Shown piece after piece: positions 12,794 to 56,755 of a stretch of 64,000 bases of DNA (its first letter is position 1; the number at the start of each line of letters is the position of its first letter). The notes beneath the pieces were generated by a model. It saw nothing but the letters and a program-made list of their open reading frames with translations, had not been told where the DNA came from and made no database searches. The translations under genes were made by a program, and so were the position numbers. The DNA is taken from IMG/VR virus record IMGVR_UViG_3300035070_002626, positions 186,001 to 250,000 of that record. One strand, given 5' to 3'.

Positions 12794-13792
12794 TTAGTTT
12801 GCAGCTTGGCGGCTGCGGATCATAGCCAGAATATCATCTGCTTTACTACTAGGCGCAGCTTCAGCTGATGGTGCCGGAGCTACTGGAGTCTCGGCTGCTG
12901 GTGCAACATCTGTCCAACCACTGTCAGTTGATGTTGATTCTGCCACAGGAGTTGCTGCTGGTGCTGCCACAGGAGTTGCTGCTGGTGCTGCACTTCCTGC
13001 TGGTGCTTGCATGCCCGCTGGGCGGAAGTATTGCCCCCAACGTTCTGCATCGTATGATTGACCGTCAACACTAGCTTCAAACATTTCCTTCATTACTTTG
13101 ATAGCCGTTTCATCTGGGCGTTTTGGTAAGAAGTCAGCCAAGTTGTACAAACCTTGCGATTCGATTGCTTCAGCTTCTGTTGCAGTAAGTGGTGTTTCTT
13201 TACGGGCCCACTTGCTTGTTGAATAGTCAGCATATCCGCCTTTGGCTGTTTTGCTGATACGGAAGTCCAGCCCACGCTCATAGTCAGTTGGAAGTTCTTC
13301 TAGTTCTGGATCCATCAACGCTGATTTAATAGTCTGGAAGATCTGAGGACCAATAATAAAACGTCGAATTGCTTTGTCACTGTTGTCATCAGAGATTGGA
13401 TTCTCACGTACAAAACCTTGCATGATGTACGAACGTTTTTTCCAATACTTACGACCCATGTCTTCAAGACTTTTGTCTTTAAACCACTGACGTACTTCGG
13501 TGAGAATTGGACAAGTTTCGCCCCACATCTCAACACATGGCACTTGTACTATAACATTCTTACTATCCATTTGACCTTTGATGCCATTGAATGGAAGTTT
13601 GATCATTGCACGTTCCATCCAAAAGAACGTATTGCCGTTATCTTCATCAGGAAGGAAGCGAAGCACTGCGCTGTCGCCTTCGTTCATATTCCAATGTGGG
13701 TAAATTGCGCCATCGCCACCGGATGACTGATTGTTGCCTTGCTTGTTGTCTGCCGCTGCAAGACGGGCGCGGATTTCTGCTAATGAAGCCAT
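12794..13792 (-). CDS. gp32: Single-stranded DNA-binding protein, gp32-like
   Basis: AVLRFLP, CVEMWGETCPIL, YWKKRSY, DYERGLDFRISK, GYADYSTSKW; Ala/Pro linker and tail DDILAMIRSRQ; adjacent to uvsX. Confidence 0.85.
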   Translation of the reverse strand: MASLAEIRARLAAADNKQGNNQSSGGDGAIYPHWNMNEGDSAVLRFLPDEDNGNTFFWMERAMIKLPFNGIKGQMDSKNVIVQVPCVEMWGETCPILTEVRQWFKDKSLEDMGRKYWKKRSYIMQGFVRENPISDDNSDKAIRRFIIGPQIFQTIKSALMDPELEELPTDYERGLDFRISKTAKGGYADYSTSKWARKETPLTATEAEAIESQGLYNLADFLPKRPDETAIKVMKEMFEASVDGQSYDAERWGQYFRPAGMQAPAGSAAPAATPVAAPAATPVAESTSTDSGWTDVAPAAETPVAPAPSAEAAPSSKADDILAMIRSRQAAN

Positions 13793-13807
13793 TTGTATTC
13801 TCCTATA

Positions 13808-13884
13808 TGCCTACGAGTAGCAACTACTACTCTTTTCATTTGCCTACGATACGCAACTACGTATCTGTGTATGCCTATATACAC
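13808..13884 (-). promoter_or_regulatory. Structured gp32 mRNA leader: three 6-bp hairpins, two with an identical UAGUUG loop and 3' GUAGGCA tail
   Basis: Stems 13815-20/13827-32, 13848-53/13860-65, 13867-72/13879-84. Confidence 0.7.
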
Positions 13885-13890
13885 CGTACT

Positions 13891-13919
13891 AGTATATACG
13901 CTTTTATTTAGTCCGTCAA
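13891..13919 (-). promoter_or_regulatory. Sigma-70-type promoter for gp32 with an embedded late TAAATA core
   Basis: TTGACG-N17-TATACT; TAAATA at 13905-13910 lies within the spacer. Confidence 0.7.
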
Positions 13920-13976
13920 GCAAAAAGGTTAAACATTGTCGAAAGAATAAACTTTGTTGATCAACTCGGCTTGGAT

Positions 13977-13982
13977 TAAATA
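13977..13982 (+). promoter_or_regulatory. Late-promoter core TAAATA, 5 nt before ATG 13988
   Basis: TTAAATA tacac ATG; no Shine-Dalgarno in between. Confidence 0.6.
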
Positions 13983-13987
13983 TACAC

Positions 13988-14563
13988 ATGACACATAATA
14001 ACATAAGCACAAAAGAAGTCAACTGTTTCGGGCAAGATGCTAAGTTCGAACTTGCTGCACCAAATCTGTGGTGGGTACATAACGCATTTGACGATGGTAC
14101 ACTAAAGTGGATGCAAAGCATCTATGTAAACATGGACAATACATTCGAAGTAACTCGTCCTGACAAACGTTTATTGCTAGCAGACGGTGCTGACAACCGA
14201 ACACTACAAGAAATTGGTCGTATGATGGTTCCAAGTCTTGAAAAAATGCTAGATCTCAAACTAAACTTAATGATTAGTAAATTCTGGCTCGACTTACCAG
14301 ACTTTGGGTGCCAACCGCATGGCGATAGTGCTGAAATTATTGTCACATTGCAAATATATATTGATGTTAAACACATCGAAGATCACCAACTTCGCATGTA
14401 CGGTGCAGAATTTATGCACGTTAATCCATCAGTTGAAGCCCCGATAATTGAAAATTGCGGATATCTCAACTTAAACACTGATCAAAAAGTACATCAAGTT
14501 ATATGCGGATGTGGTACACGACAAAGTGTAACATTCCAATACAACTTAGCTATTGATAATTAA
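13988..14563 (+). CDS. 2OG-Fe(II) oxygenase superfamily protein
   Basis: PHGD (HxD), LQIYI, distal KVH, TRQS (RxS). Confidence 0.65.
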   Translation: MTHNNISTKEVNCFGQDAKFELAAPNLWWVHNAFDDGTLKWMQSIYVNMDNTFEVTRPDKRLLLADGADNRTLQEIGRMMVPSLEKMLDLKLNLMISKFWLDLPDFGCQPHGDSAEIIVTLQIYIDVKHIEDHQLRMYGAEFMHVNPSVEAPIIENCGYLNLNTDQKVHQVICGCGTRQSVTFQYNLAIDN

Positions 14564-15114: not shown

Positions 15115-17349
15115 TTATCCTCGAGCTAGTGTTAATAATCTATCTAGCTCTGATTCGATCATTGGGTCACGCTCTGCTTTTAGTGCAGGTTTTCCTGTGT
15201 CAATGTCTGTTACTTCTGTCATATCTTCATCGTCGAGATCTTGTTGATTTGCTTTAGTAAGAGGCTCTTCCTGCGTCGGATCTTCATTTATGGATTCATT
15301 TGCACTAATAAACTTTTCGCCTTGTTTCTCAATCAACTTTTTAAGTGCAACTGCTCCTAGCACGAGTGCAACTGCTGCGCCAATTTCAAATTTGTTGTCG
15401 ATGAGCATTTGTGCATATTCTTCACCAATTGCACTTTTAACCCAATCCCATCCTTGATCCATATAATATGCCCCAGTTGCGCCTGCTGCAATTTTACCAG
15501 CATGTTTTTTTAGTAGCCATTTTAGTACTGGCCATGCACCTCTTGCTGCTACAAATTTAAGAACCCATACTGCTGCTGCTACAAGTGGAGCCATTTCTGT
15601 TAGTTGAGCTTCACTCATAAACGGACGCAATTCTCTTGCGCGGCTTGGGTGCTTTAACATTCTTAAGCCTTTAGATTCACGTTGTCTTATAACTTCCGGA
15701 GTTACGCCCATTGCACTTGCAACCTGTTGCAGTGTGTATTCTTTTTTAAAAGGCCCTATACCAAATCTTGCTTGTATAACTTTTTTAATTTTTACATCAT
15801 CAATTGCATCTAGTTGTGCTGCTAAAACTTTTTTTAATTTTGCACCGTCGACTCCGCTAAAATCAAAATCATCAATGGTGCCGCCAGGCATATCTACTTG
15901 TGTTGCTTTTTTGGTAATATCTTTAGCATCTACTGTATCGTCTGTTGGGATACGTACACCTTTGTATTGAGGACTGTTACCTGCATATGGCATTGCTTCT
16001 CCTAGTGGCTTAAAGCCTCTAGTACTGCCAGTTGGTTCTCCGTTTGGTGCAATTTCTCGTGTGCCACCGAGGTTGCTAAGTGGTCTAGCCTGTGGGCGCA
16101 TGCTACTTGGTCGTGCCATCGGACGCAGGCTAGTCATTGGTGCATTTTCACCAAGCTCGATGTTGAATTCTTTGAGTCTGGCTAGTACCAGTGGTCTACA
16201 ATCGGCATCGGGATTATCCAAACCCATTTCGTAAATGTCATCAAATAGTTCATCGTCGCCAATTAGTCCGTACAGTTGCTCAGTTGCAAATTCTCCAGCT
16301 GGGCCACAATGCAATGGTTCTTTCATAAGTTCAGCTAGTTCTGCCATTTGTTCTGGTGTGCCAGGCAGTGCCCATGTACCTTCGGTAATACTGTCTGCCC
16401 ACTGTTCAAATACGTCAGCTTCTTTCATGTTAGTTTCCTTTATTTTTGCTATTATTGGCAAAGCTTCTTCAATTCGACTATCAAGTGTGTTTGTTGAAAA
16501 CACTTCTCTTACCTTGTCAATGGTTTCATCAAGATCAGTAATTTCCATTGGATCCCATGATGCAAAGATATCTTTATAGCCCTTACGACTAATCATTTTC
16601 TTTGCTTTGCGTTTAAGGTCTTTATAGTGCCTAACTGCATCTTCAGCAATGCTTACTGCATCAACATTTTGACCAAACGATTTACTTTTAGTAGCTCTGA
16701 TAAATTTACTTAATGTTGCTATTTCATTAACTGTGTCACTGATGTGTTGACCAATCTGATCGTATGGATTACCACCTTCAGTTACATGCCTTGCCATTGC
16801 TTTACCGCCGCTTATACTACGGAATGGCATCTTAAATCTTTCGCCTTGACTGTTTTCAACAAACAAACTTTCAATGTTTCTAAAACGTGCTTCGCCTTCG
16901 CCTAGTTTTCTTGAATGTTTGATAATAAGCTTTGCTGGGCCTTGTTTATTATAACTAGTTTTGTTTGTACCGTTCCAGCCTTCAGCTAACTGGGCCATAC
17001 TTTTCATTGAATACTTTAATCTATTCATGTTGTTAAGGCTAAATGTATACAAGTTACGCTTTGCTATATTTCTAATAACTGCAAGAAAATCATACCAATC
17101 ACCGCGGTCATCACGCTCCATTGTGCGTCCGATACTGTCGCCGTAGTATACTTCAATTTTGTCTTCGCCGTCTATTAGAATGACTACTGTCCCGTAATCT
17201 TTGTTTTCAGTTTTAAAATTAAACGAAATCAAGTCAGCATCAGCTGCATTCACAGTAGGCTTGCCCATAGCGTTAAGTGCTTTAGGGTCAAAGTCTCGTG
17301 TTACTATTGTGTCAAAAATTTGTTGTGCTGCGTTGTTATCTTGTGCCAT
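15115..17349 (-). CDS. Large modular probable virion/internal-head protein containing a sigma-70 region 4 domain
   Basis: 744 aa immediately after the terminase; RFGIG...YTLQQVA...VTPEVIRQRESKGLRMLKHPSRARELRPFM aligns by eye to the RpoD C-terminus; modules separated by hydrophobic-x-E motifs. Confidence 0.75.
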   Translation of the reverse strand: MAQDNNAAQQIFDTIVTRDFDPKALNAMGKPTVNAADADLISFNFKTENKDYGTVVILIDGEDKIEVYYGDSIGRTMERDDRGDWYDFLAVIRNIAKRNLYTFSLNNMNRLKYSMKSMAQLAEGWNGTNKTSYNKQGPAKLIIKHSRKLGEGEARFRNIESLFVENSQGERFKMPFRSISGGKAMARHVTEGGNPYDQIGQHISDTVNEIATLSKFIRATKSKSFGQNVDAVSIAEDAVRHYKDLKRKAKKMISRKGYKDIFASWDPMEITDLDETIDKVREVFSTNTLDSRIEEALPIIAKIKETNMKEADVFEQWADSITEGTWALPGTPEQMAELAELMKEPLHCGPAGEFATEQLYGLIGDDELFDDIYEMGLDNPDADCRPLVLARLKEFNIELGENAPMTSLRPMARPSSMRPQARPLSNLGGTREIAPNGEPTGSTRGFKPLGEAMPYAGNSPQYKGVRIPTDDTVDAKDITKKATQVDMPGGTIDDFDFSGVDGAKLKKVLAAQLDAIDDVKIKKVIQARFGIGPFKKEYTLQQVASAMGVTPEVIRQRESKGLRMLKHPSRARELRPFMSEAQLTEMAPLVAAAVWVLKFVAARGAWPVLKWLLKKHAGKIAAGATGAYYMDQGWDWVKSAIGEEYAQMLIDNKFEIGAAVALVLGAVALKKLIEKQGEKFISANESINEDPTQEEPLTKANQQDLDDEDMTEVTDIDTGKPALKAERDPMIESELDRLLTLARG

Positions 17350-56009: not shown

Positions 56010-56660
56010 TTAACCGTATTGTGGGTTCTCAATCTGTACTAGATTAATAGTTGTTGTTGATCCTTCGGCACCTGATTTTTCAATTGTGTCATCAAGAACA
56101 TTAAAGTAGTTAACCAATACTTTTGCGTTAGCAAAGTTGATTGCATACTTGTTAGTCATACGCTTGATACGCACTAGAGAAGAACCTTCGTCAGCATAAG
56201 TTACTGTCATAGTATTAGCTGTTAATGCTGCATCAGCTAAATCAGCTAGTACACAAACACCGATTGTATCTGCTGTGCCTGTACCTGCACCTACACCGGT
56301 TGCTTTAAATGTACTACCAACGCCTGCATCTGGGCCTGCACCAATTGATTGCCAGTCAGTATTGCCAAGTGCTGTAATGATGTATAGATTGTCAACAATA
56401 AACGAACCAGCTGTAACGCCAGTCGAATCGCCAACTAGGTATTTTGTTGAACCTTTTTGACGAATAATATAGCCGTCTGCTTCAGCAACTGTGCCGATTT
56501 TAACACGACATGTTGTTGTTGGAAACTCTCCACTTGATAGATTTGAATTACCGCCAACTTGACCGAAGTATAGCTCGCCTGCTGGTGTACCATTTCCGTC
56601 TGGATTGTTAAAGCCAGCGTCTCTAGTATCAGAAATTTTAATTTTGAGAGGACGTCCCAT
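56010..56660 (-). CDS. Probable virion structural protein
   Basis: 216 aa, MGRPLKI...; own late promoter (56750-55) and AAGGAG SD; first gene after the capsid gene. Confidence 0.65.
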   Translation of the reverse strand: MGRPLKIKISDTRDAGFNNPDGNGTPAGELYFGQVGGNSNLSSGEFPTTTCRVKIGTVAEADGYIIRQKGSTKYLVGDSTGVTAGSFIVDNLYIITALGNTDWQSIGAGPDAGVGSTFKATGVGAGTGTADTIGVCVLADLADAALTANTMTVTYADEGSSLVRIKRMTNKYAINFANAKVLVNYFNVLDDTIEKSGAEGSTTTINLVQIENPQYG

Positions 56661-56668
56661 GTTGTTTT

Positions 56669-56755
56669 CTCCTTGTAGAAGTCCGATGTAGGTTCTAGCC
56701 TACTACGCGGATGGTGTTCCGCATAAAACGCAGTATTACGTTAGAAAAGTATTTA
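56669..56755 (-). promoter_or_regulatory. Late promoter plus structured leader with a candidate H-type pseudoknot next to the SD
   Basis: Stems 56727-30/56739-42, 56707-11/56718-22, 56688-92/56699-703; loop 56693-97 complementary to 56676-80. Confidence 0.55.

What the first reader, a model, noticed from the sequence alone, without database searches (positions are those of the whole stretch)
13793..13919. gp32 leader built from tandem hairpins with swapped stems but identical loop and tail
Seen on the mRNA: GUGUAU-auaggc-AUACAC, then GAUACG-uaguug-CGUAUC-guaggca, then GAGUAG-uaguug-CUACUC-guaggca-uau-AGGAG-aauacaa-AUG. The last two units differ in stem sequence yet both pair perfectly (within-genome covariation) while the loop and GUAGGCA tail are invariant; UAGGCA occurs three times. 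A sigma-70 promoter with an embedded TAAATA drives the leader. Established: T4 gp32 autorepresses translation via a pseudoknot plus an unstructured leader. Inference: a different, repeat-based operator for SSB autoregulation or for another RNA-binding protein.
Basis: partly seen in the sequence, partly recalled or inferred. Interest (0 to 1): 0.66.

Follow-up and report, generated by a model that had tools for sequence, protein, structure and literature searches.

The report
Conserved AGGCA-repeat leader of phage SSB gene
The untranslated leader of a marine jumbo phage's single-stranded-DNA-binding protein gene has three copies of a short RNA word (AGGCA) separated by small hairpins, and the same word recurs before this kind of gene in well over a hundred environmental phages, so it is probably a new translational control site like the one phage T4 uses for its gene 32.

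Summary
On the minus strand, a sigma-70-type promoter (TTGACG-N17-TATACT, with CTAAATA in the spacer) is followed by three 6-7 bp hairpins, three UAGGCA words, the ribosome-binding site AGGAG and the start codon of a gp32-fold SSB gene.

Comparison changes the emphasis. The widely conserved part is the "tail" word AGGCA:
- In 70 unique leaders of related SSB genes it occurs 2.6 times per 150 nt on the sense strand. The antisense rate is 0.06 and the background 0.16.
- A second gp32 lineage, only 23% identical in protein, carries 2-4 copies in all 54 unique leaders. The last copy sits 11 nt before the AUG.

The hairpin with the invariant U-AGUU-G loop is also real: 8 different stems, 100% paired, and 6 of 7 pairs changed on both sides. 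It is limited to a subclade.

In this 300-kb genome the SSB leader is the only non-coding AGGCA cluster. In one relative the same module also precedes a DnaE-type polymerase gene. Rfam has no matching family.

Best reading: a translational operator analogous to T4 gene 32's (structured element, repeated single-stranded words, RBS), most likely bound by the SSB itself. The binder is inferred, not shown.

The parts
13914..13919 (-). -35 hexamer TTGACG of a sigma-70-type promoter
   Evidence: Sequence. The promoter scan scores it 10 of 12 with a 17-nt spacer. TTGAC with TAnAnT recurs in relatives. PA5oct relatives use TTGAC/TATAATA promoters and the host RNA polymerase (PMC7318152).
13905..13911 (-). 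CTAAATA inside the promoter spacer; likely a T4-type late-promoter element giving a second, slightly longer transcript
   Evidence: Genome-wide, 13 of 41 CTAAATA and 13 of 16 TATAAATA lie in the 7% of the genome that is intergenic, mostly 20-30 nt before start codons. TAAATA was present in 79 of 87 related leaders, at varying positions relative to the -35. Its function is inferred.
13891..13896 (-). -10 hexamer TATACT
13873..13901 (-). Alternative hairpin spanning the -10 (10-nt arms, 90% complementary). It can form only in transcripts that start upstream, and it competes with hairpin 1.
   Evidence: the repeat finder I2. Equivalent hairpins, often followed by a U-run, occur in relatives. In the late-start fold of this window it is not part of the predicted optimum.
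13867..13884 (-). Hairpin 1 (GUGUAU/AUACAC) at or next to the predicted 5' end of the early transcript. AGGCA copy 1 (13876-13872) lies in its loop.
   Evidence: loop bases unpaired with probability about 1.0. Weak stem (-3.8 kcal/mol).
13848..13865 (-). Hairpin 2, stem GAUACG/CGUAUC, loop UAGUUG (U.G-closed AGUU tetraloop)
   Evidence: -6.6 kcal/mol. The stem varies and the loop is fixed across relatives.
13841..13847 (-). Tail GUAGGCA (AGGCA copy 2, 13845-13841)
13833..13840 (-). It can pair with codons 3-5 (UUCAUU) in the predicted optimum.
   Evidence: The pairing is seen only in the nearest relatives and has not been tested further.
13815..13832 (-). Hairpin 3, stem GAGUAG/CUACUC, loop UAGUUG. 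This is the most conserved hairpin of the subclade.
   Evidence: A GAUGAG/CUCAUC variant occurs at the same position, with two compensatory pairs.
13808..13814 (-). Tail GUAGGCA (AGGCA copy 3, 13812-13808), 3 nt upstream of the Shine-Dalgarno sequence
13800..13804 (-). Shine-Dalgarno AGGAG
   Evidence: predicted mostly unpaired.
12794..13792 (-). SSB gene (332 aa), gp32 fold
   Evidence: Pfam gp32 26.3 bits. phrog_1192 at 3e-66. 55% identity to the PA5oct SSB. Predicted fold matches 2a1k, 1gpc and 8gme with probability 1.0.

Best explanation
The region is the 5' untranslated leader of the mRNA for a gp32-fold SSB of an uncultured marine jumbo phage. It carries a conserved translational operator.

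The operator consists of 2-4 copies of the single-stranded word (A/U)(U>C,A)AGGCA(A). The copies are separated either by short unstructured spacers or by small hairpins. In this subclade the hairpins have an invariant U-AGUU-G loop and free-varying stems. The last copy lies on or next to the ribosome-binding site.

Proposed mechanism, by analogy with T4/RB69 gene 32:
1. When SSB exceeds the available single-stranded DNA, it binds the AGGCA words.
2. It spreads cooperatively over the Shine-Dalgarno/AUG region and blocks initiation.
3. Each hairpin holds its two flanking AGGCA copies side by side.
4. The hairpin at the 5' end may also stabilise the mRNA.

Shown here: the anatomy, its conservation, its strand- and gene-specificity, and the stem covariation.
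Inferred: that it acts in RNA on translation, and that the binder is the SSB itself.
For: (1) Conservation. In 70 unique leaders of SSB genes 60-99% identical to this one, AGGCA occurs 2.61 times per 150 nt on the sense strand. The antisense rate is 0.057 and the background 0.16. 64 of 70 have at least 2 copies, placed at -70 to -10.

(2) Independent lineage. A canonical gp32 lineage (Pfam 76 bits, phrog_224) is only 23% identical to this SSB. It has 2-4 AGGCA copies in all 54 unique leaders, none on the antisense strand, against a background of 0.13. The last copy is 11 nt before the AUG in 52 of 54. The published 462-kb phage LR756500.1 shows the same arrangement.

(3) Gene specificity.
- The SSB leader is the only non-coding AGGCA cluster in the 300-kb genome.
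- An IMG/VR-wide scan for three spaced AGGCA words gave 65 non-coding hits with a downstream ORF. 52 of these ORFs are SSB genes.
- AGGCA is rare in the RBS window of neighbouring genes: 6 of 382 in lineage 1 and 0 of 72 in lineage 2.

(4) Evidence for action in RNA.
- All copies lie downstream of the -10.
- They are tied more tightly to the AUG (sd 7) than to the promoter (sd 14).
- The upstream gene is co-directional in 47 of 57 loci.
- Stems covary: 14 of 15 UAGUUG instances have perfect stems, with 8 different stems. On the 14 aligned instances 100% of cells pair, 6 of 7 pairs change on both sides, and the covariation score is 0.904 against 0.217 for shuffles (0 of 500 shuffles reach it).
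- AGGCA pairs 24-36 nt apart enclose a hairpin in 55 of 63 cases. Pairs closer than 24 nt never do (0 of 51).

(5) Precedent.
- The T4 operator is a structured 5' element, then UUAAA/UAAA repeats, then the RBS. RB69's operator has diverged in sequence (PMC535899; PMC3014915).
- The M13 SSB (gp5) represses another replication gene's mRNA. This matches the identical module found before a DnaE-type polymerase gene, on the same 316-kb contig as an SSB leader.
Against: - No binding or expression data exist.
- T4 gp32 is not known to read a specific word such as AGGCA.
- In one relative the module also precedes a polymerase gene, and a third copy lies in a non-coding site. A separate regulator of replication genes would fit these facts equally well.
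- Cultured relatives (PA5oct, Phosso, Atu_ph07, RaK2, XbC2, Vibrio 2.275.O) lack AGGCA. The motif is therefore not a property of the fold as such.
- AGGCA bases are only modestly more unpaired than the rest of the leader (0.56 against 0.48).
- The transcription start is predicted, not mapped. Metatranscriptome contigs run through the promoter and cannot show a start.
- The sequences are related, so counts overstate the number of independent events. By single linkage at 80% protein identity, lineage 1 falls into 19 clusters. In 13 of them at least one leader has at least 2 copies.
Confidence: 0.5

Rival explanations
1. The AGGCA words and the AGUU-loop hairpin are binding sites for a different trans-acting factor. 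This could be a phage or host RNA-binding protein (a RegA-like translational repressor, for instance) or a small RNA. The factor would coordinate replication genes; the SSB itself would not be the binder.
For: The identical module precedes a DnaE-type polymerase gene, and a third copy lies in a non-coding site of the same 316-kb relative. An invariant loop on variable stems is typical of sites read by a specific protein. The motif is shared by two SSB lineages only 23% identical. A conserved common factor would explain this more easily than parallel specificity evolving in both SSBs.
Against: In this genome the motif serves one gene only, and single-gene operators are usually autogenous. No CsrA is encoded here, with the positive control working. 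No RegA was found, but that search had no control hit. The word lacks the GGA core of CsrA sites. Across the virus collection the motif follows SSB genes (52 of 65), not phage lineage.
Confidence: 0.22
2. The leader raises output and no repressor is involved. The repeated AGG-containing words would act as ribosome standby or enhancer sites, and the hairpins (one at the 5' end) would protect a very abundant mRNA from decay.
For: SSB is needed in large amounts, and T4 gene 32 mRNA is the most stable T4 message (PMC3014915). Hairpin 1 sits at the predicted 5' end. In 17 lineage-1 leaders and in lineage 2 the last AGGCA occupies the Shine-Dalgarno position.
Against: Only AGG can pair with the anti-Shine-Dalgarno sequence, yet C, A and the following A are conserved as strongly. 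Lineage-2 neighbour genes hardly use Shine-Dalgarno motifs (3 of 72) and never AGGCA, so in that lineage the word is not a general ribosome signal. An invariant hairpin loop is not needed for stability.
Confidence: 0.15
3. The repeats act in double-stranded DNA. They would be operator or iteron sites for a transcription factor or a replication-origin protein, or antisense promoter elements resembling MotA boxes (TTGCCTA on the other strand).
For: Direct repeats with about 33-bp spacing lie next to a promoter, among replication and recombination genes. The antisense word loosely resembles the T4 MotA box (recalled from memory).
Against: Stems change by compensatory pairs, which only a folded single strand requires. 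The upstream gene is co-directional in 47 of 57 loci, so there is nothing for an antisense promoter to drive. The copies are placed relative to the AUG more tightly than to the promoter. The orientation is always sense.
Confidence: 0.06
4. The hairpin plus linear word is a nut-like (boxB plus boxA) antitermination or pause site acting on transcription.
For: The element is a hairpin with a conserved loop and variable stem, next to a conserved linear word, just downstream of a promoter. In many relatives a hairpin with a U-run overlaps the promoter.
Against: In most loci the SSB gene is a single-gene unit followed by its own terminator hairpin, so there is no downstream terminator to override. 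There is no boxA-like sequence. The last copy is fixed relative to the AUG.
Confidence: 0.04

Closest known systems
T4/T2/RB69 gene 32 translational operator (autogenous repression by gp32)
   Same: It is the leader of a gp32-fold SSB gene. It has structured element(s) followed by repeats of a short single-stranded word that run into the ribosome-binding site. The gene is a single-gene unit with several promoters. The operator sequence diverges between relatives while its role is kept (PMC535899, PMC3014915).
   Different: No pseudoknot is evident: simple hairpins take its place, and complementarity between loops and downstream sequence was only checked by eye. The word is AGGCA, not UUAAA/UAAA. 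The leader is not A+U-rich throughout. Hairpins sit between the repeats, not only at the 5' end. Binding by the SSB is untested.
T4/RB69 gene 43 (DNA polymerase) operator
   Same: It is a hairpin whose loop is conserved while other positions vary, placed just upstream of the RBS of a replication gene. In one relative the module described here precedes a polymerase gene.
   Different: The loop sequence differs (AGUU, against UAAC). Here there are several hairpins plus linear repeats. The polymerase in the relative is DnaE-type, not family B.
M13 gene 5 protein repressing gene 2 mRNA
   Same: An SSB acting as an mRNA-specific repressor of another replication gene. This gives a precedent for the DnaE leader.
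   Different: The SSB fold and the target sequence are unrelated.
CsrA/RsmA-type leaders (several GGA words, some in hairpin loops, the last over the Shine-Dalgarno sequence)
   Same: The architecture is similar: repeated short words, partly presented by hairpins, with the last copy on the RBS. Two sites flanking a hairpin would suit a dimeric binder.
   Different: The word is AGGCA (GGC, not GGA). No CsrA gene is present in the phage. The motif is specific to one gene family.
Rfam freshwater-2 RNA (RF02980)
   Same: Three hairpins followed by an unstructured stretch and AGGAGAAnACAAAUG. A true copy lies elsewhere in this same window.
   Different: The SSB leader scores 15.8 bits against a gathering score of 49.9. 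Loops and stems do not correspond, and freshwater-2 has no AGGCA word.

Membership tests
T4-type gene 32 translational operator | Lies in the 5' leader of a gp32-family SSB gene and extends to the ribosome-binding site | tested here: met
   The last AGGCA is 3 nt before AGGAG.
T4-type gene 32 translational operator | 5' H-type pseudoknot of about 28 nt as nucleation site | tested here: not met
   Folds give three plain hairpins. By eye, no loop-to-downstream complementarity was seen. The folding program cannot predict pseudoknots, so this is a weak negative.
T4-type gene 32 translational operator | Unstructured A+U-rich tract with UUAAA/UAAA repeats | tested here: not met
   The leader has no UUAAA. 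The repeated word is UAGGCA.
T4-type gene 32 translational operator | Bound by its own gp32, with translational repression | not testable with these tools
   Needs binding and reporter assays.
gp32 SSB protein family (Pfam PF08804) | Score at or above the Pfam gathering threshold | tested here: not met
   26.3 bits against 26.8, a marginal miss.
gp32 SSB protein family (Pfam PF08804) | gp32 core fold / phage SSB family assignment | tested here: met
   phrog_1192 at 3e-66 and phrog_224 at 3e-10. Foldseek top six hits are RB69/T4 gp32 cores, probability 1.0, E about 1e-7, TM by target 0.54-0.63. The model is of moderate quality (pLDDT 65.8).
Rfam freshwater-2 (RF02980) | Covariance-model score at or above 49.9 bits | tested here: not met
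   15.8 bits, E 1.7-3.6.
Any Rfam 15 family | Match at the gathering score in the leader | tested here: not met
   whole window; permissive search.
CsrA/RsmA target leader | Repeated GGA core words and a CsrA-family protein present | tested here: not met
   The word is AGGCA. PF02599 is absent from the genome, with a working control. A host CsrA cannot be excluded.
Sigma-70-type promoter | -35 and -10 hexamers with 16-18 nt spacing | tested here: met
   TTGACG-17-TATACT, 10 of 12. Use in vivo has not been tested.

The most novel reading that the evidence does not exclude
gp32-fold SSBs of large environmental phages recognise a specific RNA word (AGGCA) and use it as an autoregulatory operator. 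This operator class would be shared by two SSB lineages only 23% identical, and in some phages it would extend to the replicative polymerase gene. SSB level would then set the output of a small replication regulon. It would be the first sequence-specific RNA code described for a gp32-type SSB, and a widespread cis-regulatory RNA motif not yet catalogued.
Probability: 0.4. Interest if true: 0.75.

Novelty: new variant of a known kind. Interest (0 to 1): 0.64.

Why it matters
T4 gene 32 is the textbook case of an SSB that measures free single-stranded DNA and sets its own translation. How gp32 picks out its own mRNA is still unclear. The 2010 review notes that RB49 lacks the T4 operator and that diverse phages need study (PMC3014915).

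This leader offers a simple, repeated and strongly conserved RNA word in more than 120 distinct natural leaders from two distant gp32 lineages, with natural variants in copy number, spacing and hairpin context. That makes SSB-RNA specificity directly testable with a purified protein and short RNAs.

It also adds a candidate family to the catalogue of phage cis-regulatory RNAs. It gives annotators a marker for SSB expression units in jumbo-phage metagenomes.

Tried and rejected
- **Rfam.** Nothing reached the gathering score. The weak freshwater-2 hit comes from shared layout and the shared Shine-Dalgarno/start context.
- **Near-DNA search of cultured phages.** No match. Leaders of six cultured relatives have no AGGCA.
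- **Antisense promoter or MotA-box reading.** Rejected, because the upstream gene is co-directional in 47 of 57 loci.
- **Other apparent AGGCA pairs near SSB.** These are conserved UvsX codons, not leaders. The three other AGGCA clusters in the genome are coding.
- **A 7-nt periodicity in AGGCA spacing** (the gp32 site size). Spacings are 10-17 nt without a hairpin and 25-35 nt with one, with no clean period. No claim is made.
- **Transcript start from public RNA runs.** Only assembled contigs were available.
- **DnaE homologue in this genome.** None found; the record is 86% complete.
- **RegA and CsrA genes in this genome.** None found. The RegA search had no positive control.
- **Non-SSB genes downstream of AGGCA repeats elsewhere.** A Cpn10-like protein, an AAA ATPase, a thioredoxin-like protein and several unknowns. 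They are too few and too uncharacterised to define a regulon, and many other hits are plain tandem repeats.
- **The terminator-like call on the plus strand at hairpin 3**. It depends on the AAUGAAAA spacer, which is not conserved.
- **Not used.** The large protein searches were not needed, and no alternative genetic code was used.

Full report
**What the window is.** The window is bases 186001-250000 of a 299,910-bp IMG/VR virus record that is 86% complete by CheckV. Runs holding near-identical DNA are mostly marine or seawater metagenomes. The gene downstream of the finding (12794-13792, minus strand, 332 aa) is an SSB. The evidence:
- Pfam gp32 scores 26.3 bits, just under the 26.8 cut-off.
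- phrog_1192 'single strand DNA binding protein' matches at 3e-66, and phrog_224 at 3e-10.
- It is 55% identical to the SSB of Pseudomonas jumbo phage PA5oct, and 45-54% identical to those of Phosso, Atu_ph07, RaK2 and the 121Q-like coliphages.
- An AlphaFold model (mean pLDDT 65.8) has RB69 and T4 gp32 cores as its six best PDB matches. Probability is 1.0 and E is about 1e-7.

A RecA/UvsX-like gene follows the SSB gene. An unknown ORF diverges upstream.

**The observation.** Full coordinates are in the parts list. There are three corrections:
- An 8-nt spacer AAUGAAAA lies between the second and third units.
- Hairpins 2 and 3 fold as 7-bp stems closed by U.G around an AGUU tetraloop.
- The leader as a whole is not more stable than shuffled sequence (z = -1.27).

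The promoter TTGACG-N17-TATACT is picked up by the scan. The 23-nt direct repeat with 33-nt spacing is found by the repeat finder. The 19-nt word TAGTTG-N6-GTAGGCA occurs nowhere else in the 300-kb genome, even with one mismatch allowed.

**What relatives show: the AGGCA word.** A search of IMG/VR with the SSB protein returned 80 loci 60-99% identical.
- In 70 unique 150-nt leaders, AGGCA occurs 2.61 times on the sense strand. The antisense rate is 0.057, and the rest of the same loci give 0.16 per 150 nt. 64 of 70 leaders have at least two copies.
- The copies lie at -70 to -10. The extended consensus is A-(U>C,A)-AGGCA-A-(C/A).
- The hairpins, by contrast, differ between clades.
- The copies sit downstream of the -10 in all but one case.
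- They are placed more tightly relative to the AUG (sd 7 nt) than relative to the promoter (sd 14 nt).
- The upstream gene runs in the same direction in 47 of 57 loci, so the words cannot be promoter elements for a divergent gene.
- Other AGGCA pairs in these loci turned out to be conserved UvsX codons.
- In this genome only four clusters of three AGGCA within 70 nt exist, and the other three are coding.
- Single AGGCA words near start codons are not enriched: 17 of 348 genes against about 12 expected.

**What relatives show: the hairpin.** A scan of IMG/VR for GTAGTTGC-N5-GTAGGCA gave 117 matches. 71 have a perfect 6-bp stem, one has 5 pairs (in unrelated sequence), and the other 45 have 1-4 pairs, as chance would give.
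- Within SSB leaders, 14 of 15 distinct UAGUUG instances are flanked by perfect stems, and there are eight different stems.
- On their alignment every cell pairs, and 6 of 7 pairs show changes on both sides. The covariation score is 0.904 against 0.217 for shuffles (0 of 500 reach it). Slid controls give 0.01-0.22.
- The instances were collected by loop sequence only, so the pairing was not selected for.
- AGUU is by far the commonest tetraloop in these leaders: 60 hairpins in 36 of 93 unique leaders, against at most 7 for any other loop.
- The core kept across the window's subclade is AGGCA, 8-9 nt, the hairpin, GU, AGGCA.
- More generally, AGGCA pairs 24-36 nt apart enclose a hairpin of at least 5 bp in 55 of 63 cases. 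Pairs closer than 24 nt never do (0 of 51). Each hairpin is therefore an insert between two neighbouring words.

- 98 matches are in non-coding context, and 65 of these have an ORF of at least 90 aa just downstream.
- 45 of those ORFs are SSBs of the window's type.
- 7 are a 301-308-aa protein that is a canonical gp32 (Pfam 76 bits; phrog_224 at 4e-40). It is only 23% identical to the window's SSB.
- Fetching that lineage gave 54 unique leaders (proteins 73-100% identical). All have 2-4 AGGCA copies, with a mean of 3.2 per 200 nt, none antisense, and a background of 0.13.
- The last copy is 11 nt before the AUG in 52 of 54.
- The upstream copies sit in a large loop closed by a helix such as GAUAACAA/UUGUUAUC (read by eye).
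- The nearest public genome, the 462-kb uncultured phage LR756500.1 (56% identity), has three copies in the same arrangement.
- Neighbouring genes in that lineage hardly use Shine-Dalgarno motifs (3 of 72) and never AGGCA. There the word next to the AUG is not a general ribosome signal.

**A second gene with the module.** In three contigs the block AGGCA, hairpin (GAGUAG/CUACUC, loop UAGUUG), GUAGGCA, 11 nt, AGGCA, AAUAA, AUG precedes a 564-aa DnaE-type polymerase. Its Pfam matches are DNA_pol3_alpha at 2.6e-41 and the finger domain at 1e-16. One of these contigs (316 kb) also carries the SSB leader. About 40 nt of the two leaders are identical, so the module was copied as a unit. The same contig has a third AGGCA-hairpin-AGGCA site followed by about 500 nt with no ORF longer than about 50 aa. 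The window's genome has no DnaE homologue.

**Promoters.** PA5oct depends on the host polymerase and has TTGAC/TATAATA promoters (PMC7318152). In this genome 13 of 16 TATAAATA and 13 of 41 CTAAATA lie in the 7% of sequence that is intergenic, typically 20-30 nt before start codons. This matches the pattern of T4-type late promoters. The CTAAATA in the spacer may therefore give a second, late start about 14 nt upstream of the early one. [quoted passage not shown]

A 10-nt inverted repeat spans the -10. In relatives such a hairpin is often followed by a U-run. It probably terminates upstream transcription. How late transcripts would pass it is unexplained.

A further promoter-like site lies at 14022-13995. 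Metatranscriptome contigs cover the leader with 2-8 differences but extend to 13956-14083. Being contigs, they show neither strand nor start.

**Mechanism.** The known T4 operator is a 5' pseudoknot that nucleates gp32, followed by UUAAA/UAAA repeats that carry cooperative binding over the RBS. RB69's operator has diverged in sequence yet works the same way. M13's SSB represses another replication gene's mRNA (PMC535899). RB49 lacks the T4 elements, and the field has asked for study of diverse phages (PMC3014915).

The present leader has the same logic with different parts: small structured elements, a repeated single-stranded word, and the last word on or beside the RBS. It is attached specifically to gp32-fold SSB genes.

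I therefore take it to be a translational operator, most likely autogenous. I give about 0.85 that it is a functional cis-acting mRNA element, and about 0.5 that the SSB itself is the binder.

The rivals are:
- a separate regulator of replication genes (0.22);
- a pure enhancer or stability leader (0.15);
- DNA-level sites (0.06);
- a nut-like transcription signal (0.04).

No CsrA gene is present. No RegA was found, but that search had no positive control.

**Comparison and novelty.** No Rfam family matches. The 15.8-bit hit to freshwater-2 reflects layout only. Full-text searches found no description of such a leader. The kind of system, an SSB leader operator, is known. This word, its hairpin module and its spread over two distant gp32 lineages are not. 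That makes it a new variant of a known kind, with function still to be shown.

**Caveats.**
- The sequences are related, so counts are not independent events. By single linkage, lineage 1 has 52 clusters at 90% protein identity and 19 at 80%. In 43 and 13 of them respectively, at least one leader has at least two copies.
- Some edge clades have one copy or a GGCAC variant.
- Accessibility of the words is only modestly above the leader average (0.56 against 0.48).

Noticed in passing
window 56658-56743 (-): A true copy of the Rfam freshwater-2 RNA (62.3 bits, gathering score 49.9). It follows a terminator-like U-run and a CTAAATA word, and it ends at the start codon of a 216-aa ORF (56010-56660) that has no Pfam or PHROG match. 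This places the 'freshwater' motif in a marine jumbo phage, as a gene leader.
   Followed up: partly
whole genome G000 (e.g. window-equivalent sites listed): TATAAATA (13 of 16) and CTAAATA (13 of 41) are concentrated in the 7% of the genome that is intergenic, mostly 20-30 nt before start codons. This is the pattern of T4-type late promoters. No late sigma factor was looked for.
   Followed up: partly
L136:2697-4391 (-) and leader at about L136:4392-4440; same contig as L097 (IMGVR_UViG_3300021197_001489): The same AGGCA-hairpin-GUAGGCA-AGGCA module precedes a 564-aa DnaE-type polymerase gene in a 316-kb relative. About 40 nt are identical to that phage's SSB leader.
   Followed up: yes
L204:1501-1564 and downstream to about 2060: A third AGGCA-hairpin(GCAUAA/UUAUGC)-AGGCA site in the same 316-kb relative. 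It is followed by about 500 nt with no ORF longer than about 50 aa, no tRNA and no Rfam match. It could be a long leader or a non-coding RNA carrying the same words.
   Followed up: partly
L328-L407 (leaders at 1300-1500 of each locus); L408:270-402: A canonical gp32 lineage (about 305 aa; nearest public genome the 462-kb uncultured phage LR756500.1) has 2-4 AGGCA copies per leader. Three sit in a big loop closed by a GAUAACAA/UUGUUAUC-type helix, and one is fixed 11 nt before the AUG. Neighbouring genes there rarely show Shine-Dalgarno motifs.
   Followed up: partly
L196:300-400 (Agrobacterium phage Atu_ph07 SSB leader): The leader has CACAAUU(U)A three times in tandem just before the RBS. 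The Vibrio phage 2.275.O and XbC2 leaders also show short duplicated words. Different SSB clades may each have their own repeated leader word.
   Followed up: no
window 13873-13901 (-): A 10-nt inverted repeat spans the -10 hexamer. In many relatives the equivalent hairpin is followed by a U-run, so a terminator and the SSB promoter overlap. How transcripts from an upstream or late start would pass it is unexplained.
   Followed up: partly
window 13834-13842 with 13778-13786 (-): The predicted optimum pairs the spacer GCAAAUGAA with codons 3-6 (UUCAUUAGC). This encloses hairpin 3, the third AGGCA, the Shine-Dalgarno sequence and the AUG in one loop. It is seen only in the nearest relatives.
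   Followed up: no
window 15115-17349 (-): A 744-aa protein combines a match to sigma-70 region 4 (Pfam 4e-08; phrog_351 'RNA polymerase sigma factor' 1e-09) with a match to a virion structural protein family (phrog_13484).
   Followed up: no
window 13995-14022 (-): A second sigma-70-like site (TTGACT-16-TATTAT with TG) overlaps the start of the divergent ORF. It would give an SSB leader of about 195 nt. Three metatranscriptome contigs end at 13956-13981, which cannot be interpreted.
   Followed up: no
L213:7335-7430 (-): An unrelated viral contig has six AGGCA(A/U)AAA words directly before a Cpn10/GroES-like gene. Other contigs have three copies before an AAA ATPase (phrog_1250) and a thioredoxin-like gene.
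   Followed up: partly
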